IMG/VR virus record: IMGVR_UViG_3300030099_004448
Location: 1-64,000 of that record
Reading direction: 5' to 3' (one strand)
DNA length: 64,000 bases
The notes beneath the pieces are model-generated. The model saw only the letters and a list, made by a program, of their open reading frames with translations, made no database searches and had not been told where the DNA came from. Shown piece by piece: positions 35,830-55,478 of the stretch. How positions within the stretch are numbered: position 1 is the first letter of the stretch; each line of letters opens with the position of its first letter. The position numbers and the translations under genes were made by a program.

Positions 35830-38800
35830 ATGACCAAACAGGTACAACTTAGAAGGGGTACAGCAGCCGAACATGCTGTTTTCACGGGTGCGGTCGGAGA
35901 ACTAACAATTGATACCACTAATGATGTGGCAATCGTACATGATGGTGTGACTCAAGGAGGTCTTCCCCTAGTTGGAACCTTAGCAGAGCAAAAAATATTA
36001 AATAAAACCGCAATTGGTATTGGAACGGGATCACTTAACGAAGGTCTATATGTAAAAGGGAAGACTGACATCAGGGGCGATCTCTTCATGCTCCCTGATC
36101 CTACATTAACTTATACTGGTATTATTTCTTATTTCGATAGTCAGAATACCATCACTGGTATTGCTACTGCTGGCGTTGATATTGGAAATAGATTTGCTCT
36201 TGGACCACAAGTTCACGTTGGTAGTGGTGCAACTATTGGTGCTGGTGCGACTACTTCAACTGTCACGGGTGTTGGACAATCAACTATTACTCTCTCCGAC
36301 ACCTTTGATACTGGATATTTTGCCACTCAAGATGGTGAATTAGACGGATTTTATGATGGTGTAGACCCCACCACTGGTCCAGAATTCATTGTCGGTATTG
36401 ATACTAGTGGTATTGCTGCTTCTTGGAGGGTGACTGGACCTGGTATCCAAGATGATACTAGAGTTTTCGCAGTTGGTGCTGGTCAAGTTCAAATTGATAA
36501 ATTAGCTTTTAATACTACTGCTGGTAGAACAATTCAAGCAGGTGACACAACTGCAGGATCTAATATCATTACTATTGATGATACTGGGGAAGGTATTGCT
36601 ACAGGAATGGTCGTTACTGACGACATTAATGGAACAGCAAATATTCCTGCAAATACAACAATTACTCAAATTATTAATGGCACTAATATCAGAATAAGCA
36701 ATAATGCTATTCTGAGTACATCAACTGACATTAAGATGACCAATCGCCAAACTTTTAAGTTTGGTGAATTCTCTAATATTTCTTTCACCGCATATTTTGA
36801 TAGTGCTGGTATCGGTAGTATTGGTGCGGGTAATCTTCAACTAACTAAGTTTGCTAAAATTGGTGAAGATCTAGAAGTTTCTGGTATCGCAACCATTGGT
36901 GCAGGTCTTTCTGTTTTATCGGGAAGAATATTCAGTGCTGGAGAAATTTTTGGACAGTCTACTGGTCAAGTTGCTGGACAATGGACTGCAAATAGACTTA
37001 TTTCAGAGAACGACATAACAGGTGTCGGTCTCACCATGCAGAACTACGTTGTTTCTGACAGATGTTACTTCAACATCAGTGATAACGGTATTGTTCGCAT
37101 GAACTCTGGTATTGCGACTTCTTTCAATACTCAGAGTCTCACAGTTACCACTGGTATTGTAACGTCACTAACTGCAGTCAATTTAGCGGTTGAACAAACA
37201 GGTACATTTGGCGACAACGTTATCCTTAATAATGGTAACTTAAATGTCAATAGTGGATTCATCTTTGGTGCAGGTGACCTTGATATTGGGGGACAAGCTG
37301 AGATAGGTGGCGACCTCAATGTAACTGGATTTACAACAGTTGGTGGCGGTGCAACGTTTACTCAGGGTATTTGGGTATCTGCAGCTGCTACTGTTATTAA
37401 TAATGTAGAGATTCGTGATGGAAATCTGACCGTATCCAGCATTGGATTTGGAACTGTTACTTCATATAAAGGACATGGTTTATCCATAGAACCAAATGTA
37501 AACATTGGTGGAGATGGTGGACCTGGCATTTTAACTGCAAAGTATATTGTAGCAAATAATACTGGAGATATTGCAAAAACTGGTAGTACAGTCGATTATC
37601 TACCATTCCAAATTACTGGTATTGACACTTCTAATATTTTCCGTGGAGATAGAGTATCTGCAGCAGGCACAGTATCTGTATATACGATTAAAAACCCTGC
37701 TATAGTTACTGATATTGGTGTTAGTAAAATATTTGTAAGCCAACCAATTGAAAGAACTGGATCTATTACAACTAGTTTCGGTTACTTGGATGGAGGTCCA
37801 GGTATTTCCACTATCAGCGGTATTAACACGACAGGTGCTGTCGTAGGATACGGTATCACTTTCGGAGCAACAGCGGAAGGAACTACCATTGCTGCTATTG
37901 GTGTTAGTGCTATTACTTTATCCGCACCCGCAACAAATACTAGAGATGAATTATTTACAGTCACTGGTGGATCCATCGGTCTTGGTCTTACTGTAATTAC
38001 TGGTGTTAATACATCTAATGTTGAAATTGGTGATATTGTTGAAAACCCAATTGCATTTACAGGGGTCCCTCCAATTGTAGGTTCTATTGGAGTTGGTAGT
38101 ATTACAGTTTCCTATGGTGCAGCTGCTGCGGTATCCAATGGAAGTTTCCAAATCTCACTTAAGAGGGACGTTTATTGGGGTCCCGCAACTGGTATTACAT
38201 CAGACTTCTTGGTAACAAATCCAAATTATGGAAGATTTGAAGGCACTCACCTAGAAGTTGAAAGAGTAGGAACTATTAATGTAACTGCTAGTGATATTAC
38301 GGCAGCAAGTGGTATTATCACTTCACTAATATCTACAAATCTAAATTATGATGTTTCTTATGGTGGCACTGCTTACATTAATAGTGGTATCGTAACCAAC
38401 CTTAATATCACCAACTCTGTAATCGGTGAAGTTGGCATTACCACTTCCTATACAGATCTTTCAAACTTTGATGTTGGTATTGGTACTGTACTTCATGTAA
38501 CTGATGTCTATGCAACCAATGTTTATGCAAACGTTGGTGTTGCGACTGCTCTTGATACCCCATTACTACAAGTAGGAACTGCAAATATTGCTGCTGGTAT
38601 CATTACTTCTGCTGGAATTAGTAGTGCTTACATCGATCGAACAGAAATTAATACTGGTATCATTACAGCTGCAGCTATAGAAGAGGTTGCAACTCCTCTT
38701 GCATACATTAATTCTGGTATCTTTACTGATGTCAACGTAACTACTCAAAATACCAACGAACTAAGATTCAATACTGGTTTTGCTACCAACTTCACGGTCA

Positions 38801-41800
38801 GCGAAAATATAAACGCAACTAGAATTACTGCAACTGACACCGTTTCTCTTGGTTCTTCTGTTGGTATTGGTAGTGTAGTTATCGATAATGCTTTCGTAAA
38901 TACTGGCATCTTTACTGATATTGGTGTAAGTACTGCTAGATTTGATAATCTATACTTCAATAACGGTATTGGTACATACCTCGGACTTACTACTGGATTT
39001 GCAGATGGTTTAGGTATCCATAGTGTATATGCTAACACTGGTATCTTTACCGCAGTTCAAATTCAAGGAAGTAACATTGCAAATTCTGCAAACTTTGAAC
39101 GTGCAGTTATCGGTATTCTTACAGTAACTCAGGACATCTTTGGTGTTGATCAAAAGAATACTGGTGTTTCTACTTTTGGATCTGCAACCATCAATGGTGT
39201 AGGTCAAACTGATTTCCATATGACTGGCGATATGAGAGTCAGTGGAGAAGTCAAGATTGGTATTGGAACCACTGGTATTACTATCGATGGAGATTCTACC
39301 GATATAGTTGGTGTCAGTACTTTCGTAGCGAATGCTGGCATTATGTCATCTGTGACAATATCTGGTATTAACACAACTACAGGTCTTTCTAGAAATGTAA
39401 CTCTGAAGACTTCTTCTTCTGGTATTGCAACGGATTATACACTAACGTTACCTGCAAGACTTGGTAAAGTTGGTCAGGTTCTTTCTCTACAAGAAGATAA
39501 TACCATTGGATTTAACACTGGTGGTCAAGGTCTGTATGAAAACAGATATTATGTATCTGCAGTTAACGGTGATGACACCAACGATGGTAAGACTCTACCA
39601 ACCAAGTCCATCAGAAGGGCTGCACAATTGGCATCCTTCGATTCATTCGTAATTCCAGGTCAGAGATATCTGGATGCTGGTGATTTGATGGAGAACAACA
39701 AAGACTTCATTGTTGATGAAGTTGTTGGTAAAGTTGAATTTAACTATGAAAATATTGGTCTTTCAACCATTTTCCCAGACTATAATCAGTCCATTTGGAA
39801 GACTTACGTTGGGGACACATTAGATGATCTAATCTATAACATCAGATTCGGTGGAAACAACCAAATCAGAGCACGTGCTGTAGGTTTTGGTACTACTACT
39901 TTCTCAACCACTACCGAACCTGCACTATATGCTTTTGAATATCTGAGATATATCACTCAGTATGTTGTTAATAATCAAACTCCACCAACATTCTACAGTG
40001 ATCCTTCTGTAACTCAACAGAGTTTTGACTTTACGATCACCCAAGATCCAGAAAATAATAATGCAAACTATTTCAATAGAAATAAGAGCGCAAGACTTCT
40101 TCTAAGTGGAAACAGACAAGAAATTATTGATAAGTCACTTGCATCCGTCGCAATTGGTGTTACCGATGTTCCCTCGTTCTACTTCCCAGGCGATGACGGT
40201 CCTGTAACTGATAGATCCAGATTCTACACTGCATATCGTTTAATCCAGAAGAACAGACAAGAAATCATTGATTATGCATGGGCAGCAACTGTTGCAACCT
40301 ATCCTGGCATTTCTTCTACGGAAGTTAAGTGTAAGAGAGACCTTGGATACTTTGTTGATGCAATTTCGACTGATATCTTCTGCGGTAGTAACGAATACGC
40401 AAGAAGATTCATGGGATTCTACTTCGATGCGAACGGAAACCCAACAGGAAATGGTTTACTCGGTGAAGAAACAGAGTCTGTATTTGCATTCACAGAAGCT
40501 GCGGTTGGTATGTCCTCTGCAGTCTGTAACTTGCTTGCAGTAACAGATCTAACAGCACCAAGTGATCCTCTTACAGGAAGTAATAATAATGCATCCAATT
40601 GTGCTAACGTAAGGTCCACAATCACCACACTGACTGGTATTGTTACCACAACCGTCGCAGCAGGTTCTACTTCTGGAATCTCCACTACTCCAAACTATGG
40701 TTACTTTGTCGTTGATTATGAAACCAACGTTCGCGGAAACGTAGGTATTGCAACTACCATGGTCACAGGTGGTAGAAAGTGTGCAAGAGACCTTGGATAT
40801 ATCATTGATGCAGTCACAATGGATGTATCGTTTGGTAGTAACCAACATATTCAACGTGCAACTAAGTTCTACTTTGATGGTGCTGGTAATCCTAAGACTG
40901 ATGGATTGGTTGCAGAAGAAGCGATTTCTGGTTATGCATTTACAAGTCTTGCCTACTATGCTAAGAAGGCAATTACTAACCAATTAAACTTCCAAGACTT
41001 TACCAGACCATTTGATCCTGGTATTGGAACTAACAAAGGTGATTTGGTCTGTGCAAACACTCAGGCATCAATCGATAACTTAGTTGGTATCCTTACAACT
41101 GCTGTACTTAGTGGATCACTGGCAGGTATTCCAACCTCAATTAACTTCGGTATTGCAGATTGTGCTGATGTAAGACAGTCAATCTATAACTACGTCGGTA
41201 TTGTTACAACTGCAGTTAGTGGAATCGGTTCTATCCCAGCACTCGATAATCCCCAAACACAATCACAACCAGTTTGTATCTTCGTTGAGGCTGGTAACTA
41301 CGTAGAAGACAACCCAATCATCCTTTATGATGATATCGCAGTTGTTGGTGATAACCTAAGAAACACCATCATTAGACCTAAGAACCAAGGTAAGGACCTC
41401 TTCCGTGTAAGAAACGGTATGTATCTGACTGGTTTCGCGATGAAGGATGCGATTGATGCTGCAGGTATTCCTCAGTCTACTTGGAGATTCGCAGTTGCAT
41501 TTGACGATCCATCAGATACATCGGTCTCCAGAACTGGTTATGCAACCAAACTGGATAAACCAATTATCAGTAGATCTCCTTATATTCAGAACTGTTCGAT
41601 TCTTTCTTTCCTTGGAGGTAACGGTATTCTGGTTGACGGTGCTAAGGTACAGTCACCAAACACTCCAATTATTAAAGAAGAAGTCGAACTCAACGCAGAC
41701 AGTGTACAACCTGAACAGGGTAAGTCCATGGTTGCTGCGGCATTCACCATGGTTTCCTTCGGTGGTATTGGTTGGCGTGTTATTAACGATGGTTATTCTC

Positions 41801-44800
41801 AGGTTGTTTCCTGTTTCCAAATCTTCTGTAGATATGGTTCACTTGCACAGTCTGGTGGTTATCTCTCAATTACTAACTCCGCAACCAACTTTGGTTTCTA
41901 CTCTCTAAGGGCGACAGGATTCTCTAGAAACTCCTTTATCTTCGATAGAGGTAGAATCGCTGCAACTGGTACTGCAGGTGGTCTACAGACCCTTAAGGCA
42001 GTAGGTTACGGACGTTCTGACATCGATAACTATGTTCTTAGATTCTTCGATGATAGTTTAGTAGATAGAACTAACCTATTCAAACCCACTACAACTCAGA
42101 AGGACTTTAATGCAGCAACTGCGGTCAACACGGTTGCAGAAACTCTCACAATCACCAACCACGGATTTACCAATGGTGATCCTGTTGTTTACAATGGAGA
42201 TGAGGACGCACAACCACAAAGAATTATCGGTGGTCTTGTTAATGATAACCAGTATTATGTTGGTTACATTGATGCAAATACCATTCAACTTTATGAAGAT
42301 GACTCTCTTGCACTTCTAGTTGATCTACAAGATACTGGTGGCGGTGGTATCCATACCCTGACGAAGGCAGCACAAGACTTCTTCGCAACTCAGGTTACCG
42401 ACGCACACAACTCTTATCAGATGTTGACCCTAGCGGGTGTTGGTTCTACTGCAAACTTCCAGTCAGGTAGACTTATTCAACAGACTGTTGCTAGTGGTAC
42501 TGCAATTGGTTACGCTGTAACTTACTACGATTCTAGTAGAGAACTTCTAGTTGGTCTGGAACTATCTGGTGGTATCAGAAGACCATTCGCAGTTTCCGAT
42601 GGTGTTAGTAATTTAACAGTTACCGATCACACCTCACCAAACCCAATTGCAATTGGTATTACTGTTGTTGCGGGACTATCTACTTATTGGACCGTTGAGT
42701 TTAAGGTTGACTCCACCACAACTGGTAACCAGATTCTTAATGTTGCAGATCTACCCGAAGATTATAGACTACACTTCCATAGACCTTCCATCGTTAACTC
42801 TTCTGCACATACCTGGGAATACTCTGGTTCTGGTATTGACTATAACGCTCTACCAGAAAATGGAGGTAAATCCGATCCAAATACTGAGCAGGTCTCTGAA
42901 CTTGGTGGACGAGTTTACTCCTCAGGTACTAACGAACTGGGTGACTTTAAGGTTGGTGATGCAATTACCGCATTCAACAGAACAGGTAATATTATCTTTA
43001 ACAACACCGTTACCATCGGTACATTGGATTCTATCCGACTGTCCCTATCTGGTGGTGCTGTTATTGAAGAGTTCTCCACTGATGTTGGTCTTGGAGACAA
43101 TGAAACTGGTGGTGCTAAGAACACCAGAATTTCAACTCAGTTAGCAATCAGATCGTTCCTCAACAACAGACTTGGTTCTGTTCTTGATAAGACCGTATCA
43201 ACTAACGCAATTCCAAACGCAATTGTTCAGTTGAATGCAATTGGTCAGATCAACGCTGACCTAGTTCCACCAAGATCTGTAAATTACTTCAGATCTGATA
43301 ATGATGGCGGCAGAATTCAACTTGTAAACTTGATTCCTGCAACTAATCTCAATCAGGGTGATACCGTTGTTGAACCAACTGACTCCTTCGTTCTAATCTC
43401 CGACTTGCTCGGACAATACCTGATTCTTGATTCCACTAATGATGCTGGTATTGCACTTACAGATTTCAGTTTCAGTAACGGATTTGAAGTTGTATCTGCG
43501 GTTACTGGTGGTGGTGCAATTGGTCTCGTTACAGGACCTCCAGGAGTTGGTGTTAATACAACCGTTGTAGACCCTGCAATTGGTTATGGCACAACTGGTC
43601 TAGTTAAGGGTGTACCAATTGCAGTTACTAATCTACAAGGTGGTTCTGGATATTCTAACCCAGGCATTTACACTGGCGTAAGACTGGATCAATCTTCTGG
43701 TATTGGTACTGGAACGAGTGCTAAGATTACCATTGGACCTTCTGGTAACGTAACAAACGTTGCTATCCAAACTGGTGGATTTAAATATGCAGTTGGTGAT
43801 ACTCTAACTCTGAATGATCCAAATGTAATTGGTGGTAGAGTTGGTGGATCTAACTTCACAATTGATGTTGGTGAAGTTGAAACAAGACTATATCTTGCAC
43901 TGCAAGAAGGCAGCGCAGGTACTCAGAAGTTCCCTGGTAGTACTGTTCTTCCAGATTACATCGCTGATGAAAGTGCAGTTGGATATTCAACGAACATTGG
44001 TATTGCACTAACTGAGACATTTACTCCAACCGATTATCTTGTCTCTGGTAGCGTTGACTTTGCAAATGATCGCATCATTCTTGGTTCTGGTCACCCATTT
44101 GTTGATGGAGACCCAGTTCTTTACAAAACGAACGGTGGTGTTGTAATTAGTGATCTACTTGATAGTGAAATTTATTACATCAAGACAGTTGGTATTACAT
44201 CAGTTCAACTGTACACTACTTACGCACTCACGACCGTCAAGTCACTTCTCAGTTCTGGTACTGGAACACACTCTCTAAGTAGAGTTGGTGTTACAACTCA
44301 AACTGATCAGATCATATTCAAAAACCACCCATTTACTCAGGGTGATGCCATTAGAATTCAAGTTGGAAGTGCAGCGCCAATTGGTGTTACAACTGGAAAC
44401 TTCTATTACATTGGTTCTACGACAACCAACTCCTTCACACTACATACCACAAGAAATCAAGCACTGGGTTCTGTTAACGGTCTTATCCTTAACACTATTG
44501 ATCTGGACACTGCATACGGAGCAAACGTTGGTGTCGTAACCTTCCAGGAACAAAATGTTGTTTACACCAAGTCTGTAAACACTTCTTCTTCAGACGTTAG
44601 TAACTTCTCTCTACTTTCCTCCAGTTCACTTGATGCTCAGAATATCATTTCTGGTGTATTTGATCCTGCTAGACTGGGTTCTGGAACTGCAAACGCAGAA
44701 GTTGTTCTTTACGGTGATTCTTCCTTTAAGAAGGTTATCAAGTCTGTTGGTATTGGAACAACTCAACCAATTGGTGTAACTTACACCTCTGCAGATCTAG

Positions 44801-46575
44801 CACCTGGTGGTATAGGAATCAACACCTACTATGGTGATATTCAACTGACTCTCAACAGAGTTGTTTCTACTCCAGATGATTATTCTACAGTTGGTATTTC
44901 TAAGTTCAAGTTAAGTACATTTGCAGTCGGAACTGATGGTGAAATAACAATTAGATCTTCTACCAATAGTGGTGATGTTGATGCCGCGACCCTGGGTGGA
45001 CAGAACGGTGCATATTACTTAGATATTAACAACAGTACTGGACAACTTTCTATCGCAAGAGGTGGTACGGGCCTAGGCGCGTTACCAGGTAACGGTAGTA
45101 TGTTGATTGGTAATGGTTCTACTTACACATTGACTGGAGATCCAACGCTTTCTGGAACAATGTCCGCAGGATTTACAGTCCTCGGTGGTAAGGATATTAC
45201 CTTCACTAACTCCTCTTCATTTACTGGAGATTCATCGGGTAGAATTCAACTTTATAACAATTCACTTTACCTCCAGTACAACACTTCAATTATCTTCAGA
45301 GAGTCTACTGGTAGTACCGATGTTGCAAACATCAACAACAGTGGAGATCTAACCTCTATTGGTGACATGCAGTTCCGTAGAGGAACCTTCACCCAGGCAA
45401 CTGGAACCGCACCATTCAGTGTTTCTTCTACCACACTGGTTAATAATCTGAACGCAGACCTACTTGATGGTATTCAGGCATCATCTTTCGTAAGAGCTGA
45501 TGCAAATGATACGGTTGCGAATAACCTGAGTTTCACTTCAGTCACTACTCCAATCACAACGAACTCCATCAAGTTCAATAACTCTGAAATGAGTTCTTCG
45601 TACTATACGGAAGCAGTTGGAGTACTTGCATTTGACGAAAACTTCTATAATGATAGTGCATATGGTTCGGAGGCCACCGCGCCCGCGCAAACCTTCACCA
45701 CAAACGGTGGTGGTCTTGTAATCAAGAACGAAGATGGATGGGGTGCAGTTCTTACCTCACAAAACATTGGCTGGTGCCAAGGCAACTTCGCTAACCTAGA
45801 AATCGGTGGTAACCAGGTATTCCACACTGGAAACGACGGTTCTGGATCTGGTCTTGACGCGGATACCGTTGATGGAATCCAAGGTGCATCATTCCTCAGA
45901 TCTGATGCTGCAGACACTCTAGACGCAGTTATGACTGTTGGTCAAAATGGAAGAATTGACTTCTCAGATATCTCTACCGTACCTGATAATCCTTCAAACC
46001 AACAGGCAGATTACATCAGATTCGGTTCTAACGGATCTATCTCACAGGTTTCTGGTCGTGGAGGTTTGATGATCGCATCATCTGATGATGGTATGGTCAT
46101 TGCAAACGGTGATGTTGGTAGAGGATTTACAGATTCTAATATCAATATAGACATTGAAGATACTTTCATTCTTTCCGACTTCAAGATTGAGTTGTGGACA
46201 AATCTTCAAAATGGATTTGGAAATCAACAAGCGTTTGTCTTTAGAACAGACGGTGAATTTAGAGCTCCTGTAACAGTTCAGGCAAACTCTGATATCAAAC
46301 TCAAGACTAACCTCAGACCTCTTGAAAATTGCCTAGATAAGATCTCGCGCATCACTGGATATCGTTACGAACGTATCGATCTTAACAACAAAGAACAAAT
46401 CGGTGTTGTCGCGCAGGAAGTTGAGAAGGAGTTCCCAGAACTCGTAAGTGAGGAGAAGGGAATTAAGGCAGTATCCTACGGAAACCTCGTTGCCGTCGCG
46501 TTTGAGGCGATCAAGGAACTTAAGGCAGAGGTTGATACCCTCCGCGAAGAGATCCGCGAACTGAAGGGAGAGTAA
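35830..46575 (+). CDS. Giant tail fibre/tailspike (3581 aa): Mtd_N-like N-terminus, pectin-lyase-like beta-helix, C-terminal peptidase S74 intramolecular chaperone
   Basis: QVQLRRGT..EH..FTGA.GELTIDT...VHDG.T.GG at the N-terminus; YYVSAVNGDDTNDG...KSIRRA and I.VEAGNYVE...VVGDNLR; SDIKLKTN...IGVVAQEVEKEFPELV...VSYGNLVAVAFEAIKEL at the C-terminus. Confidence 0.88.
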   Translation: MTKQVQLRRGTAAEHAVFTGAVGELTIDTTNDVAIVHDGVTQGGLPLVGTLAEQKILNKTAIGIGTGSLNEGLYVKGKTDIRGDLFMLPDPTLTYTGIISYFDSQNTITGIATAGVDIGNRFALGPQVHVGSGATIGAGATTSTVTGVGQSTITLSDTFDTGYFATQDGELDGFYDGVDPTTGPEFIVGIDTSGIAASWRVTGPGIQDDTRVFAVGAGQVQIDKLAFNTTAGRTIQAGDTTAGSNIITIDDTGEGIATGMVVTDDINGTANIPANTTITQIINGTNIRISNNAILSTSTDIKMTNRQTFKFGEFSNISFTAYFDSAGIGSIGAGNLQLTKFAKIGEDLEVSGIATIGAGLSVLSGRIFSAGEIFGQSTGQVAGQWTANRLISENDITGVGLTMQNYVVSDRCYFNISDNGIVRMNSGIATSFNTQSLTVTTGIVTSLTAVNLAVEQTGTFGDNVILNNGNLNVNSGFIFGAGDLDIGGQAEIGGDLNVTGFTTVGGGATFTQGIWVSAAATVINNVEIRDGNLTVSSIGFGTVTSYKGHGLSIEPNVNIGGDGGPGILTAKYIVANNTGDIAKTGSTVDYLPFQITGIDTSNIFRGDRVSAAGTVSVYTIKNPAIVTDIGVSKIFVSQPIERTGSITTSFGYLDGGPGISTISGINTTGAVVGYGITFGATAEGTTIAAIGVSAITLSAPATNTRDELFTVTGGSIGLGLTVITGVNTSNVEIGDIVENPIAFTGVPPIVGSIGVGSITVSYGAAAAVSNGSFQISLKRDVYWGPATGITSDFLVTNPNYGRFEGTHLEVERVGTINVTASDITAASGIITSLISTNLNYDVSYGGTAYINSGIVTNLNITNSVIGEVGITTSYTDLSNFDVGIGTVLHVTDVYATNVYANVGVATALDTPLLQVGTANIAAGIITSAGISSAYIDRTEINTGIITAAAIEEVATPLAYINSGIFTDVNVTTQNTNELRFNTGFATNFTVSENINATRITATDTVSLGSSVGIGSVVIDNAFVNTGIFTDIGVSTARFDNLYFNNGIGTYLGLTTGFADGLGIHSVYANTGIFTAVQIQGSNIANSANFERAVIGILTVTQDIFGVDQKNTGVSTFGSATINGVGQTDFHMTGDMRVSGEVKIGIGTTGITIDGDSTDIVGVSTFVANAGIMSSVTISGINTTTGLSRNVTLKTSSSGIATDYTLTLPARLGKVGQVLSLQEDNTIGFNTGGQGLYENRYYVSAVNGDDTNDGKTLPTKSIRRAAQLASFDSFVIPGQRYLDAGDLMENNKDFIVDEVVGKVEFNYENIGLSTIFPDYNQSIWKTYVGDTLDDLIYNIRFGGNNQIRARAVGFGTTTFSTTTEPALYAFEYLRYITQYVVNNQTPPTFYSDPSVTQQSFDFTITQDPENNNANYFNRNKSARLLLSGNRQEIIDKSLASVAIGVTDVPSFYFPGDDGPVTDRSRFYTAYRLIQKNRQEIIDYAWAATVATYPGISSTEVKCKRDLGYFVDAISTDIFCGSNEYARRFMGFYFDANGNPTGNGLLGEETESVFAFTEAAVGMSSAVCNLLAVTDLTAPSDPLTGSNNNASNCANVRSTITTLTGIVTTTVAAGSTSGISTTPNYGYFVVDYETNVRGNVGIATTMVTGGRKCARDLGYIIDAVTMDVSFGSNQHIQRATKFYFDGAGNPKTDGLVAEEAISGYAFTSLAYYAKKAITNQLNFQDFTRPFDPGIGTNKGDLVCANTQASIDNLVGILTTAVLSGSLAGIPTSINFGIADCADVRQSIYNYVGIVTTAVSGIGSIPALDNPQTQSQPVCIFVEAGNYVEDNPIILYDDIAVVGDNLRNTIIRPKNQGKDLFRVRNGMYLTGFAMKDAIDAAGIPQSTWRFAVAFDDPSDTSVSRTGYATKLDKPIISRSPYIQNCSILSFLGGNGILVDGAKVQSPNTPIIKEEVELNADSVQPEQGKSMVAAAFTMVSFGGIGWRVINDGYSQVVSCFQIFCRYGSLAQSGGYLSITNSATNFGFYSLRATGFSRNSFIFDRGRIAATGTAGGLQTLKAVGYGRSDIDNYVLRFFDDSLVDRTNLFKPTTTQKDFNAATAVNTVAETLTITNHGFTNGDPVVYNGDEDAQPQRIIGGLVNDNQYYVGYIDANTIQLYEDDSLALLVDLQDTGGGGIHTLTKAAQDFFATQVTDAHNSYQMLTLAGVGSTANFQSGRLIQQTVASGTAIGYAVTYYDSSRELLVGLELSGGIRRPFAVSDGVSNLTVTDHTSPNPIAIGITVVAGLSTYWTVEFKVDSTTTGNQILNVADLPEDYRLHFHRPSIVNSSAHTWEYSGSGIDYNALPENGGKSDPNTEQVSELGGRVYSSGTNELGDFKVGDAITAFNRTGNIIFNNTVTIGTLDSIRLSLSGGAVIEEFSTDVGLGDNETGGAKNTRISTQLAIRSFLNNRLGSVLDKTVSTNAIPNAIVQLNAIGQINADLVPPRSVNYFRSDNDGGRIQLVNLIPATNLNQGDTVVEPTDSFVLISDLLGQYLILDSTNDAGIALTDFSFSNGFEVVSAVTGGGAIGLVTGPPGVGVNTTVVDPAIGYGTTGLVKGVPIAVTNLQGGSGYSNPGIYTGVRLDQSSGIGTGTSAKITIGPSGNVTNVAIQTGGFKYAVGDTLTLNDPNVIGGRVGGSNFTIDVGEVETRLYLALQEGSAGTQKFPGSTVLPDYIADESAVGYSTNIGIALTETFTPTDYLVSGSVDFANDRIILGSGHPFVDGDPVLYKTNGGVVISDLLDSEIYYIKTVGITSVQLYTTYALTTVKSLLSSGTGTHSLSRVGVTTQTDQIIFKNHPFTQGDAIRIQVGSAAPIGVTTGNFYYIGSTTTNSFTLHTTRNQALGSVNGLILNTIDLDTAYGANVGVVTFQEQNVVYTKSVNTSSSDVSNFSLLSSSSLDAQNIISGVFDPARLGSGTANAEVVLYGDSSFKKVIKSVGIGTTQPIGVTYTSADLAPGGIGINTYYGDIQLTLNRVVSTPDDYSTVGISKFKLSTFAVGTDGEITIRSSTNSGDVDAATLGGQNGAYYLDINNSTGQLSIARGGTGLGALPGNGSMLIGNGSTYTLTGDPTLSGTMSAGFTVLGGKDITFTNSSSFTGDSSGRIQLYNNSLYLQYNTSIIFRESTGSTDVANINNSGDLTSIGDMQFRRGTFTQATGTAPFSVSSTTLVNNLNADLLDGIQASSFVRADANDTVANNLSFTSVTTPITTNSIKFNNSEMSSSYYTEAVGVLAFDENFYNDSAYGSEATAPAQTFTTNGGGLVIKNEDGWGAVLTSQNIGWCQGNFANLEIGGNQVFHTGNDGSGSGLDADTVDGIQGASFLRSDAADTLDAVMTVGQNGRIDFSDISTVPDNPSNQQADYIRFGSNGSISQVSGRGGLMIASSDDGMVIANGDVGRGFTDSNINIDIEDTFILSDFKIELWTNLQNGFGNQQAFVFRTDGEFRAPVTVQANSDIKLKTNLRPLENCLDKISRITGYRYERIDLNNKEQIGVVAQEVEKEFPELVSEEKGIKAVSYGNLVAVAFEAIKELKAEVDTLREEIRELKGE
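39658..41230 (+). repeat. Paralogous helical block shared with gp7 (13890-15375)
   Basis: QYVVNNQTPPT, KC.RDL..I.D, SNQH..R.TKFYFD..GN.KTDGLV.EEA and DCA.VRQS...YVGI occur in the same order in both proteins. Confidence 0.85.
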
Positions 46576-46591
46576 GAACTCTCTCATGGTT

Positions 46592-46599
46592 TATAAATA
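46592..46599 (+). promoter_or_regulatory. T4 late promoter (TATAAATA)
   Basis: Perfect consensus upstream of gp13. Confidence 0.85.
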
Positions 46600-51216: not shown

Positions 51217-53430
51217 ATGACCAAAGCTAAATCTTGTCCCCCAGGGAAGTACTGGTGTTATACTGATAAAAAATGTAAAAAAATTCCCATGGGATTTTAT
51301 GTGGGTCGTGGCGGTTATTTGTCAAGAGAAGATGAGAATGGTGAAGATGGTAAAAAGAACGGTAAGAAAAATGGTGGTGTTTCTAACGGCAATGGTAATG
51401 GGAATGGTGGTAATGGGAATGGGGGTGGTTCTTCTGGATCCAACGGGGGCAACGGCGGAGGAGGAATGAGTGAGGAATCAAATCCTCGTATTCCAAGAAA
51501 GAAGGGACAACCTGCGAATTCTAAGAAACACTCGGATTTATATACAGACGAAAATCCCAAGGGTACAATTCATGGACTTGGATTCAAAGATGTTGAAACT
51601 GCTAAAGCATCTGTATCTAAAATTCGCAATTCATCAAGATCTCATGCTCACAAAATCCAGGCAGCAGTTGCTATGGAACAGAGAGCAAGAGAAATGGGCA
51701 AAACTTCGGAAGCAGCAGTCTATCGAAAGTATATCAATTCCATGAAAAAGAAGACTAAAAAAATGAACGAAGAAATCATCACTGAAAAACGTGATGGTAA
51801 ATCTGCCAAGGACAAGGGTTATTCTCTCCGCGACTGGTTCAAAGGTGGTGGTTGGAAACAAACTGGTGGTAAATATGATGGTAAACCCTGTGCGAAACAA
51901 CCAGGTCAAAAAACTAAACCATTTTGTCGTGATGCAGATGATCGTGCTGCAATGAGTAAAGACGAAAGAAATAGAAGAGCCGCTAAAAAGCGCAGAGAAG
52001 ACCCAAATCCCGATAGAAAAGGAAAGGCAAAAATGGTAACCGATTCATACGATTTTTCAAACTGGAGAGACGAGTTCAAAGCACTCGAATTTGAAACTGT
52101 TGATATTATTGGCACAGAACCACTGAAACCAACTGAAGGTCTCGGAAGTGAGATGATTGAGGCAAAGGATAATTGCGGTTGTGGGAAAAATCCTTGCGAA
52201 ACCTATGGTGAGGGTGAACAAATTCCTAAAAATGTAAAGAAAATTGCTAAAGAATTAGACAAGGCAGTTGCCATGCATAAGGATCAAGCAAAAAGATTAA
52301 GAGCAGCAGGTATTTCTGAAGAAAATATTGATGAAAAATGTTGGAAAGGTTATGAAAAGAAAGGTATGAAGACCATGTTTGGTAAGAGATATCCAAACTG
52401 TGTCAAGAAAGAAGAAACAGAAGTCACAAAAGAGGGTGTCCTTGATGCCGCTCTGGAGACTGATAAGAAAATGGGTGAACTTCATAAGAAAGTTGACAAT
52501 GATGTCAAACGAATGAAGAAGGGTAAGAAGTTCAAAGAAGAATTAGAAGGCAACTTGAAAGAGATGTCTTCAGAAAAAGATATTAATAAAAAACTTCAGA
52601 AGAAGGTAAACTCTAAAGATCTAAATCCTTCAGAATATATTAAAAATACAAGACTGATGCCTGGTTCTGGTATTATTAAAAAATTACCAGAAGGAAATGC
52701 TGGACCAAGTACTCCCGTAAAACAATATGATGGTAAGTTTATGCCTAACCCAGGTGCTGGTAGACCTGGTAAGGTTAGGCTAAAACCAGGAACTCCTGCA
52801 GCATTAAGACTTGCTCATAAAGAGTATTCTGATTGGAGAACTGAACTCTTTGAAGGCGATGGTGATCATGAATACGAAATGGCCCGTCGTCAATTAGCAA
52901 CCATTAAAAATGCAGTTTCTCGTCTTGAGAAAAAGATGGGTGAAACTGGAGAGGGTGAACTCAAAGCATGGGTTCAGTCAAAGTTAACAAGATCTGCAGA
53001 TGACATCGATACAGTTGCAGATTATATGACTAACGAGGAGAATATCCAGGAAGGGGAAAAAGACGCTTGTTACCACAAAGTCAAGTCTCGTTATTCCGTA
53101 TGGCCTTCTGCATACGCATCTGGTGCATTAGTCAAGTGTCGTAAAGTCGGTGCAAAAAATTGGGGCAATAAGACTAAGAAAGAAGAAATTCAGTATATGA
53201 ACACTGAAGACTATCAAAGGATACAGGAATATGGTAACGTTTACACTATAATAGTGTTATGGAGAGGTAAGTCCCATCGCTTGCAACTTTTCTTCCAGGG
53301 TACGGCAAGACCTTCCCGAGATGAAGTTAAGAACGAAGTAGAAAAGATTTACCCAGGTGGAATGGTGAGTTACTACTTCCCCAGCGCCACCGATCCAGGT
53401 AAACCAATTATTGTTTCTACAAGGAGTTGA
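51217..53430 (+). CDS. Modular hypothetical protein (737 aa), possible head-internal polyprotein
   Basis: String of short modules (CPPGKYWC, HSDLYTDENPKG, LRDWFKGGGW, KCWKGY...YPNCVK, DHEYEMAR.QL, ACYHKVKSRY.VWPSAYASGALVKCRK) separated by K/E-rich linkers; late promoter upstream. Confidence 0.8.
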   Translation: MTKAKSCPPGKYWCYTDKKCKKIPMGFYVGRGGYLSREDENGEDGKKNGKKNGGVSNGNGNGNGGNGNGGGSSGSNGGNGGGGMSEESNPRIPRKKGQPANSKKHSDLYTDENPKGTIHGLGFKDVETAKASVSKIRNSSRSHAHKIQAAVAMEQRAREMGKTSEAAVYRKYINSMKKKTKKMNEEIITEKRDGKSAKDKGYSLRDWFKGGGWKQTGGKYDGKPCAKQPGQKTKPFCRDADDRAAMSKDERNRRAAKKRREDPNPDRKGKAKMVTDSYDFSNWRDEFKALEFETVDIIGTEPLKPTEGLGSEMIEAKDNCGCGKNPCETYGEGEQIPKNVKKIAKELDKAVAMHKDQAKRLRAAGISEENIDEKCWKGYEKKGMKTMFGKRYPNCVKKEETEVTKEGVLDAALETDKKMGELHKKVDNDVKRMKKGKKFKEELEGNLKEMSSEKDINKKLQKKVNSKDLNPSEYIKNTRLMPGSGIIKKLPEGNAGPSTPVKQYDGKFMPNPGAGRPGKVRLKPGTPAALRLAHKEYSDWRTELFEGDGDHEYEMARRQLATIKNAVSRLEKKMGETGEGELKAWVQSKLTRSADDIDTVADYMTNEENIQEGEKDACYHKVKSRYSVWPSAYASGALVKCRKVGAKNWGNKTKKEEIQYMNTEDYQRIQEYGNVYTIIVLWRGKSHRLQLFFQGTARPSRDEVKNEVEKIYPGGMVSYYFPSATDPGKPIIVSTRS

Positions 53431-53432
53431 TC

Positions 53433-53600
53433 ATGCAAGACGACATCGAACTTTCAAACTTGACCAAAGCACTTGAGTACGAACGTCAATCTAGAGAGAT
53501 TGATAAGATGACTCTAACTGAAGCGAGAGAGTTCGCAAAGTCTTATTTAAAACTCTACTTTAAACAACAGGAAGTAATAGGTTCTATAGCAAACATGTGA
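53433..53600 (+). CDS. NblA-like small helical protein (55 aa); absent from ORF track
   Basis: Hand translation: MQDDIELSNLTKALEYERQSREIDKMTLTEAREFAKSYLKLYFKQQEVIGSIANM*. AAGGAG RBS at 53421-53426. Ungapped by-eye alignment to NblA. The ORF itself is well supported; the functional call is less certain. Confidence 0.6.
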   Translation: MQDDIELSNLTKALEYERQSREIDKMTLTEAREFAKSYLKLYFKQQEVIGSIANM

Positions 53601-53604
53601 TTTT

Positions 53605-55251
53605 ATGAGTGACGTATATCTTGGTAATCCTAATCTAAAAAAAGCGAATACACCAATTGAATTCACGGAAGAACAAATCCGTGAATTCATGAAGTGTAAA
53701 GAAGATCCTGTTTATTTCGCGAACAATTATATCAAGATTGTTTCACTAGACGAAGGTTTAACACAATTCCATCCATATCATTTCCAAGAGAAACTGATTA
53801 ATCGATTTCATGAGAATCGATTTAATATCTGTAAGATGCCACGACAGACAGGTAAGTCTACCACCGTGGTGTCTTATCTTTTACACTACGCAGTTTTCAA
53901 CGATAGTGTCAACATTGGTATTCTTGCAAACAAAGCGGCAACCGCAAGAGAACTTCTAGGAAGGTTACAAACTGCATACGAGAACTTACCTAAATGGATG
54001 CAACAGGGTATTATAGCCTGGAACAAAGGATCAATGGAGTTGGAAAATGGGAGTAAGATATTGGCAGCTTCTACGTCTGCGAGTGCTGTCCGAGGTATGT
54101 CATTCAACGTCCTCTTTCTCGACGAGTTCGCGTTCGTCCCAAATCACGTCGCTGATGACTTCTTTGCCTCTGTTTATCCTACTATTACTTCTGGTAAAAA
54201 CACCAAAGTAATCATTGTATCTACCCCGCACGGTATGAATCACTTCTACCGTATGTGGCATGATGCGGAAAAGAGTAAGAACGATTATATTCCAACTGAT
54301 GTTCACTGGTCTGAAGTCCCTGGTAGGGATTTGGAATGGAAAGAACAAACAATTAAGAACACATCTGAACAACAATTCAAAATCGAGTTTGAGTGCGAGT
54401 TCTTAGGATCTATTGATACTTTGATTACCGCAGCGAAATTAAAGTCTCTTGTTTATGATGATCCAATCAAAAGAAATGCAGGATTGGATATCTATGAAGA
54501 ACCAAAAGAAGATCACACATATGTTGTTACCGTTGACGTTGCAAGAGGTGTAGAAAAAGACTACTCTGCATTTTGTGTATGCGACACAACGTCATTTCCC
54601 TATAAGTTAGTTGCTAAGTATAGAAATAATACGATTAAACCAATTCTGTTTCCAAATATTATTAGAGATGTATCGAAGGCATACAATCAAGCATTTATAT
54701 TGGTAGAAGTTAATGACATTGGAGACCAAGTAGCATCGATCATTCACATGGACTTAGAGTATGACAACATACTCATGTGTTCCATGAGAGGTCGTGCGGG
54801 TCAAGTAGTTGGTCAAGGATTTTCTGGTAAGAAGACACAATTAGGTGTCAAGATGTCCAAAACCGTAAAGAAGATTGGATCTCTAAATCTAAAAGCGCTG
54901 ATTGAGGACGATAAGTTACTAGTATCTGATCTAGATGTAATTAGTGAGTTAACAACGTTTATCCAAAAATCAGGATCATTCGAGGCAGAAGAAGGTTGTA
55001 ATGATGATCTTGCAATGTGTCTTGTCATCTTTGCTTGGTTAGTTCAACAGGACTACTTTAAAGAAATGACGGACAACGATGTTCGTAAAAAAATATATGA
55101 AGACCAAAGAGATCAGATCGAAGCTGATATGGCACCATTTGGATTTATCAGTGATGGTTTAGATGACGAAGGAGTCATTATAGAAAATGATGGAACAATG
55201 TGGAAGACAGATGAATATGGTGACATGTCATATATGTGGGAATATCACTGA
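53605..55251 (+). CDS. gp17: Terminase large subunit gp17
   Basis: YLGNPNLK, Walker A PRQTGKS, Walker B VLFLDEFAF, STPHG.NHFY, nuclease VTVDVARG and DDLAM motifs. Confidence 0.98.
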   Translation: MSDVYLGNPNLKKANTPIEFTEEQIREFMKCKEDPVYFANNYIKIVSLDEGLTQFHPYHFQEKLINRFHENRFNICKMPRQTGKSTTVVSYLLHYAVFNDSVNIGILANKAATARELLGRLQTAYENLPKWMQQGIIAWNKGSMELENGSKILAASTSASAVRGMSFNVLFLDEFAFVPNHVADDFFASVYPTITSGKNTKVIIVSTPHGMNHFYRMWHDAEKSKNDYIPTDVHWSEVPGRDLEWKEQTIKNTSEQQFKIEFECEFLGSIDTLITAAKLKSLVYDDPIKRNAGLDIYEEPKEDHTYVVTVDVARGVEKDYSAFCVCDTTSFPYKLVAKYRNNTIKPILFPNIIRDVSKAYNQAFILVEVNDIGDQVASIIHMDLEYDNILMCSMRGRAGQVVGQGFSGKKTQLGVKMSKTVKKIGSLNLKALIEDDKLLVSDLDVISELTTFIQKSGSFEAEEGCNDDLAMCLVIFAWLVQQDYFKEMTDNDVRKKIYEDQRDQIEADMAPFGFISDGLDDEGVIIENDGTMWKTDEYGDMSYMWEYH

Positions 55252-55478
55252 TGACTTTTGAAGAGTCATTTGAATTAGAACACTTATTTCTAGAAGAAAG
55301 AAAGTGTAGATCTTGTGGTCAGATAAAAAATTTATTGAATGATTTTTACTTAACAAGAAAAGATCGAGGCACTTTACCATCTGCATATTCTTATGAATGT
55401 AAAGAATGTACGGTAAAAAGAATTAAAACATCACGATCTAAAAATAAACAAGTTTATTGGGAGTATCCTGATTGGTAG
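55251..55478 (+). CDS. Small zinc-ribbon protein (75 aa; CRSC...CKEC)
   Basis: ATG at 55251 overlaps the gp17 stop (TGATG). Two CxxC pairs and C-terminal YPDW. Confidence 0.8.
   Translation: MTFEESFELEHLFLEERKCRSCGQIKNLLNDFYLTRKDRGTLPSAYSYECKECTVKRIKTSRSKNKQVYWEYPDW

What the first reader, a model, noticed from the sequence alone, without database searches (positions are those of the whole stretch)
53433..53600. Hidden NblA-like micro-ORF in the late packaging cluster, just upstream of gp17
Seen: a 55-codon ORF below the track cut-off, with an AAGGAG RBS, fills the gap between the 737-aa gene and gp17. Known: NblA is the ~55-65 aa helix-loop-helix adaptor that targets phycobiliproteins to Clp proteases, and some cyanophages carry it. 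Inference: the peptide aligns without gaps to NblA as I recall it (LEYER vs FEFRR/FSIRS; KMTLTEAREF vs NMSHDQAKDF; KLYFKQQEVI vs RLLMIKSNVI). That suggests a phage-encoded antenna-degradation or proteolysis adaptor expressed late. Caveat: the N-terminal EQQF-type motif and the C-terminal Lys of canonical NblA are not exactly conserved, so it may be an NblA-fold protein repurposed for, e.g., packaging.
Basis: partly seen in the sequence, partly recalled or inferred. Interest (0 to 1): 0.8.

Follow-up and report, generated by a model that had tools for sequence, protein, structure and literature searches.

The report
Cyanophage NblA-like gene before terminase

Summary
ATG 53433 to TGA 53600 encodes 55 aa. 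An AAGGAG lies 6 nt upstream. The ORF fits between a 737-aa gene (stop at 53430) and gp17/TerL (ATG 53605).

It is a real gene. dN/dS against eight relatives is 0.06-0.15, and only this frame stays open. It matches phrog_27081 at E 4e-16, and 218 clusters at 50% identity match the family profile.

The NblA reading holds as remote homology:
- Pfam PF04485, NCBIfam, a PDB profile search and Foldseek give no significant hit. Foldseek also misses the PDB NblAs when given a model of a genuine NblA, so that negative carries no weight.
- BLASTP to Ma-LMM01-type NblA gives E 8e-6, centred on IDKMTL..AR at the predicted turn.
- hhalign gives P 1e-4 to 1e-3 and beats 200 of 200 column shuffles.
- AlphaFold2 predicts a helix-loop-helix (pLDDT 88).
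- Published HHpred on family members gives 95-97% probability to NblA structures.

It is not new. The orthologue in phage S-SCSM2R (87% identical, same site) is published as nblA ORF118. S-TIM5 and S-SCSM1 homologues were called nblA in 2019 and 2022.

No member of this myovirus clade has been tested experimentally. Late expression is inferred from position only.

Interest is low to moderate: a new member of a known kind.

The parts
53421..53426 (+). Shine-Dalgarno-like AAGGAG, 6 nt upstream of the ATG, inside the last codons of the 737-aa gene
   Evidence: Read directly from the sequence. The AGG core is invariant in the DNA alignment with five relatives.
53433..53600 (+). 55-codon NblA-like gene (phrog_27081 family), stop codon included
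   Evidence: dN/dS 0.06-0.15. The orthologue in S-SCSM2R is annotated NblA.
53436..53504 (+). Predicted helix 1 (residues 2-24). It carries the conserved I5, L7, K12, F/L14, Y16, E17, R21, I23 and D24.
   Evidence: AlphaFold2 model, pLDDT 88.3. Column statistics over 136 representatives.
53505..53513 (+). Predicted turn (K25-M26-T27), part of the IDKMTL motif shared with Ma-LMM01-type NblA
   Evidence: In the Ma-LMM01 NblA model the turn falls at the same motif.
53514..53591 (+). Predicted helix 2 (residues 28-53). It carries the conserved A/L35, K36, K40-L41-Y42, K44-Q45-Q46-E47 and a hydrophobic residue at position 52, which is equivalent to Nostoc NblA L51.
51217..53430 (+). Upstream 737-aa gene of unknown function (phrog_727), 2 nt from the ORF. 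It is probably on the same transcript and translationally coupled. This is context, not part of the NblA-like protein.
   Evidence: Metatranscriptome contigs bridge the junction.
53605..55251 (+). gp17 large terminase, starting 4 nt after the ORF's stop (context)
46592..46599 (+). TATAAATA, a T4-late-promoter-like motif. It is the nearest one upstream, just before gp13, and is a candidate promoter of the gp13-to-gp18 late operon that contains the ORF. This role is inferred only.
   Evidence: The count in the window (5) equals the chance expectation (4.6), so this is weak evidence.

Best explanation
The ORF encodes a divergent member of the NblA family. It belongs to the clade carried by some T4-like cyanomyoviruses of Synechococcus (phrog_27081).

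Shown here:
- It is a real gene under purifying selection.
- It is predicted to form a 55-residue helix-turn-helix hairpin.
- It is a remote but specific sequence relative of genuine NblA proteins.
- It is tightly packed between a 737-aa gene and gp17 in the morphogenesis and packaging gene block.

Inferred from what is established for cyanobacterial NblA and for the T7-like cyanophage S-TIP37 NblA:
- The protein dimerises and binds phycobiliproteins of the host antenna through the end of helix 2.
- It hands them to the ClpC-ClpP protease.
- This frees amino acids for virion protein synthesis and lowers host light harvesting.

Inferred from position:
- It is transcribed with the late genes and translationally coupled to its neighbours. 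It would therefore act when demand for structural protein peaks.
For: Real gene:
- dN/dS is 0.06-0.15 and only this frame stays open.
- phrog_27081 matches at E 4e-16.
- The family profile finds 218 clusters at 50% identity.
- The ATG and the RBS core are invariant.

Link to NblA:
- BLASTP to Ma-LMM01-type NblA gives 13/27 identities, E 8e-6.
- hhalign of the family against NblA profiles gives P 1.1e-4 to 1.4e-3. None of 200 column shuffles reaches the observed score, and reversed templates score about half.
- With filters off, the NblA profile A5 scores family members at 22.3 bits against 9.2 for the best decoy. The family profile A1 scores 90 of 120 NblAs above the best decoy.
- The NblA profile A7 is valid: it hits 1OJH, 3CS5 and 2Q8V at E 2e-9 to 9e-8.
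- The register is gapless with the PDB NblA sequences.
- Predicted helices span residues 2-24 and 28-53, pLDDT 88. The Ma-LMM01 NblA model has the same topology.
- The position equivalent to Nostoc L51 is hydrophobic in 101 of 119 representatives.
- In the ESM Atlas, 28 of the 100 nearest clusters carry PF04485, and an NblA/ycf18 cluster gives TM 0.83/0.71.

Literature:
- HHpred gives 95.5% for S-SCSM1 ORF237 and 96.4-97.3% for the S-SM2, Bellamy, S-SKS1, S-B43, S-B05, SynMITS9220M01 and S-SRM01 homologues (PMC9602691). These same proteins align with the window ORF in A1.
- The S-SCSM2R orthologue is named nblA (PMC12801897).
- The function of viral NblA was shown for S-TIP37 (PMC12695635).

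Distribution and expression:
- All roughly 27 phage records that carry the family are cyanophages isolated on Synechococcus.
- The gene sits at several unrelated loci, as an auxiliary gene would.
- A natural tandem fusion (P0019) fits a dimeric working unit.
- Seawater metatranscriptome contigs span the junction between the 737-aa gene and the ORF.
Against: - No hit to PF04485 for the window ORF even at E<=10. Only 1 of 16 close family members reaches E 0.029, and PF04485 is not among the listed families for 136 representatives.
- The family profile finds no PDB chain at E<=10.
- Foldseek finds nothing in the PDB or in BFVD. The genuine NblA control also fails, so this is uninformative.
- My hhalign probabilities are modest (18-56%). 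The signal comes mainly from the Ma-LMM01/Microcystis-type NblA and from the motif at the turn. A mixed NblA HMM (A7) does not separate family members from decoys.
- The canonical E-Q of the LxLEQxF motif is replaced by S/T-K. The Lys equivalent to Nostoc K53 is Asn here and is Lys in only 24 of 107 representatives.
- No cellular homologue was found in two genome scans.
- No member of this clade has been tested experimentally.
- Dimerisation, phycobiliprotein binding and ClpC binding were not tested here.
Confidence: 0.62

Rival explanations
1. The protein is an NblA-derived adaptor with a changed target or role. It would descend from NblA and still recruit Clp, but direct other host proteins to degradation instead of, or besides, phycobilisomes. 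Alternatively it would act specifically in the late phase together with a partner domain.
For: - The EQ motif is lost and the C-terminal Lys is not conserved.
- The closest carriers, S-SCSM2R and S-SCSM1, also infect Prochlorococcus, which lacks phycobilisomes (PMC12801897; PMC9602691).
- S-TIP37 NblA directs degradation of non-phycobilisome proteins too (PMC12695635).
- The domain is repeatedly fused, in both orders, to a T4 Y07B-type domain of unknown function.
- It sits in the late operon, whereas S-TIP37 nblA is expressed with the DNA-metabolism genes.
Against: - All isolates that carry the family were isolated on phycobilisome-bearing Synechococcus.
- The hydrophobic position equivalent to the phycobiliprotein-binding L51 is retained.
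- The functional S-TIP37 NblA also lacks the Lys (PMC12695635).
- There is no direct evidence for any other target.
Confidence: 0.2
2. The protein is an unrelated small helical-hairpin phage protein. Its likeness to NblA would be convergent, and it would serve morphogenesis or packaging (for example an assembly chaperone or terminase accessory factor) or some other host takeover role.
For: - It sits between gp16 plus the 737-aa gene and gp17 here. In most other carriers it sits between the VrlC-like structural gene and gp13, which is also in the late structural block.
- It is not significant against PF04485, the PDB profile search or Foldseek.
- Short amphipathic hairpins readily give weak profile matches.
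Against: - The same gene lies outside structural modules in the S-TIM5 group, S-SKS1, S-B43, Sf-FS3 and DSL-LC03, and next to a helicase in S-SCSM1.
- It is present in only about 5% of T4-like cyanophage records and in no non-cyanophage. It is therefore not a core assembly factor.
- The match to NblA is specific against shuffled and reversed controls, and NblA is the top HHpred hit in a published search.
Confidence: 0.15
3. The ORF is spurious: a chance open frame in an intergenic gap.
For: It is only 55 codons long and falls below usual gene-calling cut-offs.
Against: - dN/dS is 0.06-0.15 with dS above 1.
- Homologues at 40-55% identity lie at different loci in distant phages.
- The RBS and ATG are conserved.
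- 218 clusters match the family profile.
Confidence: 0.01

Closest known systems
nblA ORF118 of Synechococcus phage S-SCSM2R (PQ898602; BMC Biol 2025, PMC12801897)
   Same: It is 87% identical over all 55 residues. It has the same neighbours (gp15, gp16, large hypothetical protein, this gene, gp17) and is annotated and published as NblA.
   Different: S-SCSM2R has an extra 91-aa ORF between it and gp17. The window comes from an uncultured relative that is 100% identical to a 239-kb IMG/VR contig. Neither gene has been tested experimentally.
Cyanomyovirus nblA-like genes: S-SCSM1 ORF237, the S-TIM5 gene, and the S-SM2, Bellamy, S-SKS1, S-B43 and S-SRM01 homologues (Nadel et al. 2019; PMC9602691)
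   Same: They belong to the same family (38-55% identity, phrog_27081) with the same conserved core, F.YEK.SR.ID ... K..KLY.KQQE. Published HHpred predicts them to be NblA at 95-97%.
   Different: The genomic position differs. Most lie between the VrlC-like gene and gp13, or in variable regions, and not next to gp17. In S-SKS1 the domain is fused to a Y07B-type domain.
NblA of the T7-like cyanophage S-TIP37 (Nature 2025, PMC12695635), the only marine viral NblA with a deletion phenotype
   Same: It is a small helical-hairpin protein of a marine Synechococcus phage. It lacks the canonical C-terminal Lys (Thr at that position). Its proposed role is to release amino acids for virion proteins.
   Different: S-TIP37 NblA passes PF04485 (27.8 bits), keeps LTLEQQF, is 79 aa long, and is expressed with the DNA-metabolism genes before the morphogenesis genes. 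The window protein fails PF04485 and lies inside the late operon.
Cyanobacterial and freshwater-phage NblA (PF04485; PDB 1OJH, 2Q8V/2QDO, 3CS5; Ma-LMM01 NblA)
   Same: The length class and the helix-turn-helix topology are the same. The register is gapless, with a shared M-[ST]-L-x-[EQ]-A-[RK]-[ED]-[FL] segment after the turn and a hydrophobic residue at the L51-equivalent position.
   Different: The N-terminal E-Q is replaced by S/T-K. There is no W-G tail, and the protein ends about one residue after the K53-equivalent position. Its HMMER score is below family thresholds.

Membership tests
NblA (Pfam PF04485 / phycobilisome proteolysis adaptor) | Score at or above the PF04485 gathering threshold (25 bits) | tested here: not met
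   The window ORF gives no PF04485 hit at E<=10. One of 16 family members reaches E 0.029. PF04485 is not among the listed families for 136 representatives. Controls pass: S-TIP37 NblA scores 27.8 bits and Ma-LMM01 NblA 51.8 bits.
NblA (Pfam PF04485 / phycobilisome proteolysis adaptor) | Remote (profile-profile) sequence homology to genuine NblA | tested here: met
   - hhalign gives P 1.1e-4 to 1.4e-3 and probability 18-56%. None of 200 column shuffles reaches the observed score.
- BLASTP gives E 8e-6.
- The decoy-controlled HMM cross-search separates real sequences from decoys.
- Published HHpred on family members gives 95-97%.
My own profiles were thin (Neff 1.3-2.3), so the strength of this result rests partly on the literature.
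NblA (Pfam PF04485 / phycobilisome proteolysis adaptor) | Protein of about 55-65 residues made of two antiparallel helices joined by a short turn | tested here: met
   The protein has 55 aa. AlphaFold2 gives pLDDT 88.3 with helices at residues 2-24 and 28-53. The Ma-LMM01 NblA control has the same topology, with helices at 17-37 and 40-69. This is a prediction only.
NblA (Pfam PF04485 / phycobilisome proteolysis adaptor) | Structural match to solved NblA structures | tested here: inconclusive
   Foldseek against the PDB and BFVD finds no significant hit. The genuine NblA model also fails to retrieve 1OJH, 2Q8V or 3CS5, so the method cannot see this fold. In the ESM Atlas structure row, an NblA/ycf18 cluster gives TM 0.83/0.71. 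That comparison used the model of the nearest cluster, not of this protein.
NblA (Pfam PF04485 / phycobilisome proteolysis adaptor) | Conserved N-terminal L-x-L-E-Q-x-F motif in helix 1 | tested here: not met
   The hydrophobic positions are kept: L7 in 115 of 127 representatives and F14 in 121 of 133 (Leu in the window). The E-Q positions are S/T/N and K/R (T11 and K12 in the window). Nadel et al. note that this Q is more variable in marine phage NblAs.
NblA (Pfam PF04485 / phycobilisome proteolysis adaptor) | C-terminal phycobiliprotein-binding positions (Nostoc L51 and K53) | tested here: inconclusive
   The L51 equivalent is I52, which is hydrophobic in 101 of 119 representatives. The K53 equivalent is N54, which is Lys in only 24 of 107, and many members end before it. 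The functional S-TIP37 NblA has Thr at that position (PMC12695635), so the Lys is not strictly required.
NblA (Pfam PF04485 / phycobilisome proteolysis adaptor) | Homo- or heterodimer as the working unit | not testable with these tools
   No multimer modelling was available. One indirect hint is P0019, a natural single-chain tandem of two family domains.
NblA (Pfam PF04485 / phycobilisome proteolysis adaptor) | Binds phycobiliproteins and ClpC, and causes bleaching | not testable with these tools
   This needs experiments. The searched literature holds none for any member of the cyanomyovirus clade.
NblA (Pfam PF04485 / phycobilisome proteolysis adaptor) | Restricted to cyanobacteria, plastids and cyanophages | tested here: met
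   All significant tblastn hits in 50,697 phage records are cyanophages isolated on Synechococcus or Parasynechococcus. No hit was found in GTDB species genomes with the patterns used.
phrog_27081 (cyanomyovirus small protein, function unannotated in PHROGs) | Significant full-length match to the family HMM | tested here: met
   The match has E 4.4e-16 and 59.8 bits, with residues 3-52 on profile positions 4-54 of 59.

The most novel reading that the evidence does not exclude
The cyanomyovirus NblA-like clade would be a phage-only offshoot of NblA that has been rewired. It has lost the canonical EQ and Lys contact residues. It is embedded in the late morphogenesis and packaging operon. In some lineages it is duplicated in tandem or fused, in either order, to a T4 Y07B-type domain. 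On this reading it would direct Clp-dependent degradation of a different or broader substrate set, timed to virion assembly, including in phycobilisome-less Prochlorococcus hosts of S-SCSM2R-like phages.
Probability: 0.2. Interest if true: 0.55.

Novelty: new member of a known kind. Interest (0 to 1): 0.25.

Why it matters
Viral NblA was recently shown, in a T7-like cyanophage, to shorten the infection cycle and to reduce light harvesting by oceanic Synechococcus. Whether the much more divergent NblA-like genes of T4-like cyanomyoviruses do the same has never been tested.

This window adds one more carrier, a roughly 239-kb uncultured relative of S-SCSM2R, and documents three points:
- The gene is under strong purifying selection.
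- It sits in at least three different genomic contexts.
- In this lineage it lies inside the late packaging operon, which implies a different timing from the T7-like case.

This helps annotation, because the family should be labelled NblA-like rather than hypothetical. It also helps in choosing a model for a knockout. It does not change current understanding.

Tried and rejected
1. Direct HMMER against Pfam, NCBIfam and PDB sequences gave no usable hit. The NCBIfam NblA model barely sees even Ma-LMM01 NblA (E 0.03), so it cannot decide the question.
2. Foldseek of the AlphaFold2 model against the PDB and BFVD found nothing. I reject this as evidence because the positive control failed in the same way.
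I rebuilt the profile from the window and IMG/VR loci only (A3).
The word-indexed searches returned only Ma-LMM01-type and T7-like-type NblAs, so my NblA profiles stayed thin.
5. Sequences P0149, P0157 and P0161 carry a KKGW tail that resembles the canonical NblA C-terminus, and I tested them as a possible bridge. They are clearly in the family (hhalign 98.8%) but match NblA only weakly (P 0.06). I dropped this as evidence.
6. Two genome-contig scans for a host origin found no cellular homologue. Each scan used only one or two peptide patterns, so I could not confirm the published clustering with picocyanobacterial nblA.
7. Promoter and terminator scans around the ORF gave counts at chance level. 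There is no dedicated promoter.
9. A second family copy or a Y07B partner in the window: none was found.

Full report
**Observation**

The window is part of a T4-like cyanomyovirus. Its gene order is:

| Gene | Coordinates |
|---|---|
| VrlC-like giant gene | 35830-46575 |
| gp13 | 46627 |
| gp14 | 47453 |
| gp15 | 49714 |
| gp16 small terminase | 50766 |
| 737-aa gene of unknown function | 51217-53430 |
| the ORF in question | 53433-53600 |
| gp17 large terminase | 53605-55251 |
| 80-aa endonuclease-VII-like ORF | 55236 |
| gp18 sheath | 55564 |

The ORF is exactly as described. It has an ATG at 53433, a TGA ending at 53600 and 55 codons. AAGGAG lies 6 nt upstream, within the end of the 737-aa gene. 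The window is 100% identical over this region to a 239-kb IMG/VR contig (L019).

**Is it a gene?**

Yes.
- Pairwise dN/dS against eight relatives is 0.06-0.15, with dS up to 1.6. All other frames are closed in every relative.
- The ATG and the AGG core of the RBS are invariant, while third codon positions vary.
- The protein matches phrog_27081 (function unannotated) at E 4.4e-16.
- A profile built from the window plus IMG/VR homologues (A3) finds 218 clusters at 50% identity at E<=1e-3 among 1.84 billion proteins.
- Four seawater metatranscriptomes from one study hold contigs that run from the 3' end of the 737-aa gene into or through the ORF (53125 or 53169 to 53534-53598). This fits co-transcription. 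It is not proof, because DNA carry-over cannot be excluded and contigs carry no strand.

**What is it? Direct family searches are negative.**

- Pfam shows no PF04485 hit for the ORF even at E<=10.
- Only one of 16 family members touches PF04485, at E 0.029.
- PF04485 is not among the listed families for 136 representatives.
- The family profile finds no PDB chain at E<=10.
- NCBIfam is silent, but it hardly recognises a genuine NblA either.
- The AlphaFold2 model is confident (pLDDT 88.3; helices at residues 2-24 and 28-53). Foldseek finds nothing in the PDB or BFVD.
- I ran the control. An AlphaFold2 model of Ma-LMM01 NblA, which scores 51.8 bits against PF04485, also fails to retrieve 1OJH, 2Q8V or 3CS5. 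Foldseek therefore cannot see this 2-helix fold, and its negatives carry no weight.

**More sensitive and controlled comparisons are positive.**

- BLASTP of the ORF against a Ma-LMM01-type NblA aligns residues 14-40 with 13/27 identities, E 8e-6 for the single comparison. The match centres on IDKMTLTEAREF against IDKMTLEQARDM.
- In both AlphaFold2 models this motif sits at the turn between the helices, so the sequence register and the structural register agree.
- hhalign of the family alignments (A1, A3) against NblA alignments (A5 is Ma-LMM01-type; A7 is Ma-LMM01-type plus T7-like cyanophage type) gives P 1.1e-4 to 1.4e-3 and probability 18-56%. A7 is a valid NblA profile, because it hits 1OJH, 3CS5, 2Q8V and 2QDO at E 2e-9 to 9e-8.
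- None of 200 column-shuffled templates reaches the observed score (z about 6-7), and reversed templates score about half.
- With HMMER filters off, profile A5 scores window-clade members at 22 bits against 9.2 for the best reversed decoy. Family profile A1 scores 90 of 120 NblAs above the best decoy. The mixed profile A7 does not discriminate.
With window residue i matched to Nostoc residue i-1, the Nostoc phycobiliprotein-binding L51 corresponds to I52, which is hydrophobic in 101 of 119 representatives. K53 corresponds to N54, which is Lys in 24 of 107.
- The E-Q of LxLEQxF is replaced by S/T-K, while the flanking hydrophobic residues (L7, F/L14, Y16) are kept.
- In the ESM Atlas, 28 of the 100 nearest clusters carry PF04485. 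This is a lead only.

**Literature**

- The family has already been called nblA. Nadel et al. (bioRxiv 10.1101/494369; Environ Microbiol Rep 2019) listed one cyanomyovirus, S-TIM5, among marine phages with predicted nblA.
- The S-SCSM1 paper (PMC9602691) predicted ORF237 as NblA by HHpred, at 95.5% and 95% to the Nostoc 7120 and S. elongatus 7942 structures. It reported 96.4-97.3% for the homologues in S-B43, S-B05, S-SM2, Bellamy, S-SKS1, SynMITS9220M01 and S-SRM01 (Tables S2 and S4). These are the very proteins that align with the window ORF at 38-55% identity.
- The closest isolate, S-SCSM2R, has an 87%-identical orthologue at the same site. It is annotated NblA and listed as nblA ORF118 in its paper (PMC12801897).
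- Functional evidence exists only for other clades: a metagenome-assembled phage gene (G1) that complements S. elongatus delta-nblA, and the T7-like S-TIP37 NblA. Deleting the S-TIP37 gene lengthens the latent period from 3 h to 8-10 h, reduces morphogenesis-protein synthesis and delays loss of PSII yield (PMC12695635).

**Context and distribution**

Among 62 IMG/VR loci and a dozen GenBank phages the gene occupies at least three kinds of site:
1. gp15, gp16, 737-aa gene, ORF, gp17. This is the window clade, at 53% identity or more. Some members carry an inserted 91-aa ORF before gp17.
2. VrlC-like gene, small ORF, ORF, (small ORF), gp13, gp14, gp15, gp16. This is the arrangement in S-SM2, Bellamy, S-SRM01, SynMITS9220M01 and many uncultured phages.
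3. Variable regions: near tRNAs and purM in S-TIM61 (the S-TIM5 group), near 2OG-Fe(II) oxygenases in Sf-FS3, among runs of small genes in S-SKS1 and S-B43, and next to a helicase in S-SCSM1.

About 27 of roughly 475 T4-like cyanophage records (gp17 at 60% identity or more) carry it. All of these were isolated on Synechococcus. This is the behaviour of an auxiliary gene, not of a packaging component.

No dedicated promoter or terminator stands out. The nearest TATAAATA upstream is at 46592, just before gp13. The 2-nt and 4-nt gaps to the neighbouring genes suggest co-transcription and translational coupling with late genes. This is an inference. It contrasts with S-TIP37, where nblA is expressed with DNA-metabolism genes before the morphogenesis genes.

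**Mechanism proposed**

- Shown: a conserved, probably transcribed gene for a 55-residue helical hairpin that is remotely but specifically related to NblA.
- Inferred: it dimerises, binds host phycobiliproteins through the distal part of helix 2, and recruits ClpC-ClpP. This releases amino acids when structural-protein demand peaks and lowers host light harvesting.
- A natural tandem fusion (P0019) fits a dimeric unit.
- I put 0.62 on this explanation, 0.2 on an NblA-derived adaptor with altered targets, 0.15 on an unrelated hairpin protein, and about 0.01 on a spurious ORF.

**Novelty and verdict**

The gene is a further member of a family already published and annotated as nblA, including its orthologue at the same locus. 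What remains open, and is modestly interesting, is that no cyanomyovirus member has been tested. The clade also fails canonical NblA signatures (PF04485 threshold, EQ motif, Lys), sits in the late operon in this lineage, and in others is fused to a Y07B-type domain. Interest is 0.25.

Noticed in passing
L007:2255-2668 (S-SKS1 SWZG_00226); proteins P0066 and P0060; L010:3220-3444 (Sf-FS3): The NblA-like domain occurs naturally fused to a domain of about 70 aa, phrog_3426. This is T4 Y07B-like (PF27001) by ESM Atlas features and has no known function. The partner is N-terminal in S-SKS1 and P0066 and C-terminal in P0060. In Sf-FS3 the same domain is a separate gene two genes downstream. The pattern hints at a functional partner. 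No such domain was found in the window.
   Followed up: partly
protein P0019 (134 aa, metagenomic): This is a single-chain tandem of two NblA-like domains (residues 1-64 and 71-134). It fits a dimeric working unit, or a pair of paralogous genes merged into one ORF.
   Followed up: no
window 51217-53430: A 737-aa gene lies between gp16 and gp17. It has a Gly/Asn-rich low-complexity N-terminus and Lys-rich stretches, has no Pfam domain, and matches several PHROGs of unknown function (phrog_727 at E 8.5e-68). A homologue follows gp16 in many cyanomyoviruses, including those whose NblA-like gene lies elsewhere.
   Followed up: partly
L001:5170-5445 (S-SCSM2R ORF119); L013:1208-1474: In S-SCSM2R and in one IMG/VR contig whose NblA-like gene is 100% identical to the window's, an extra ORF of about 91 aa lies between the NblA-like gene and gp17. 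It is absent from the window. The site is therefore a hotspot for small insertions and deletions.
   Followed up: partly
window 55236-55478: An 80-aa ORF with a GTG start overlaps the last 16 nt of gp17. It matches phrog_4723 (endonuclease VII) at E 3.8e-36 and is annotated 'PacI protein' in S-SCSM2R.
   Followed up: no
window 6302-20935, 22579-30087, 35830-46575: Three giant ORFs of 4877, 2502 and 3581 aa lie upstream of the neck genes. The last occupies the position of the VrlC-like structural protein that precedes the NblA-like gene in S-SM2-type genomes. In the window it is followed directly by gp13, with no NblA-like gene there.
   Followed up: no
proteins P0149, P0157, P0161 (metagenomic; loci L076, L077): These family members end in ..LIKKGWLP.., which resembles the canonical NblA C-terminus (Ma-LMM01 IIKKNWGLEP, Nostoc LLKHQWGL). 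They are clearly in the family (hhalign 98.8%) but are not significantly closer to NblA by hhalign (P 0.06). Their contigs are too short to tell whether they come from phage or host.
   Followed up: yes
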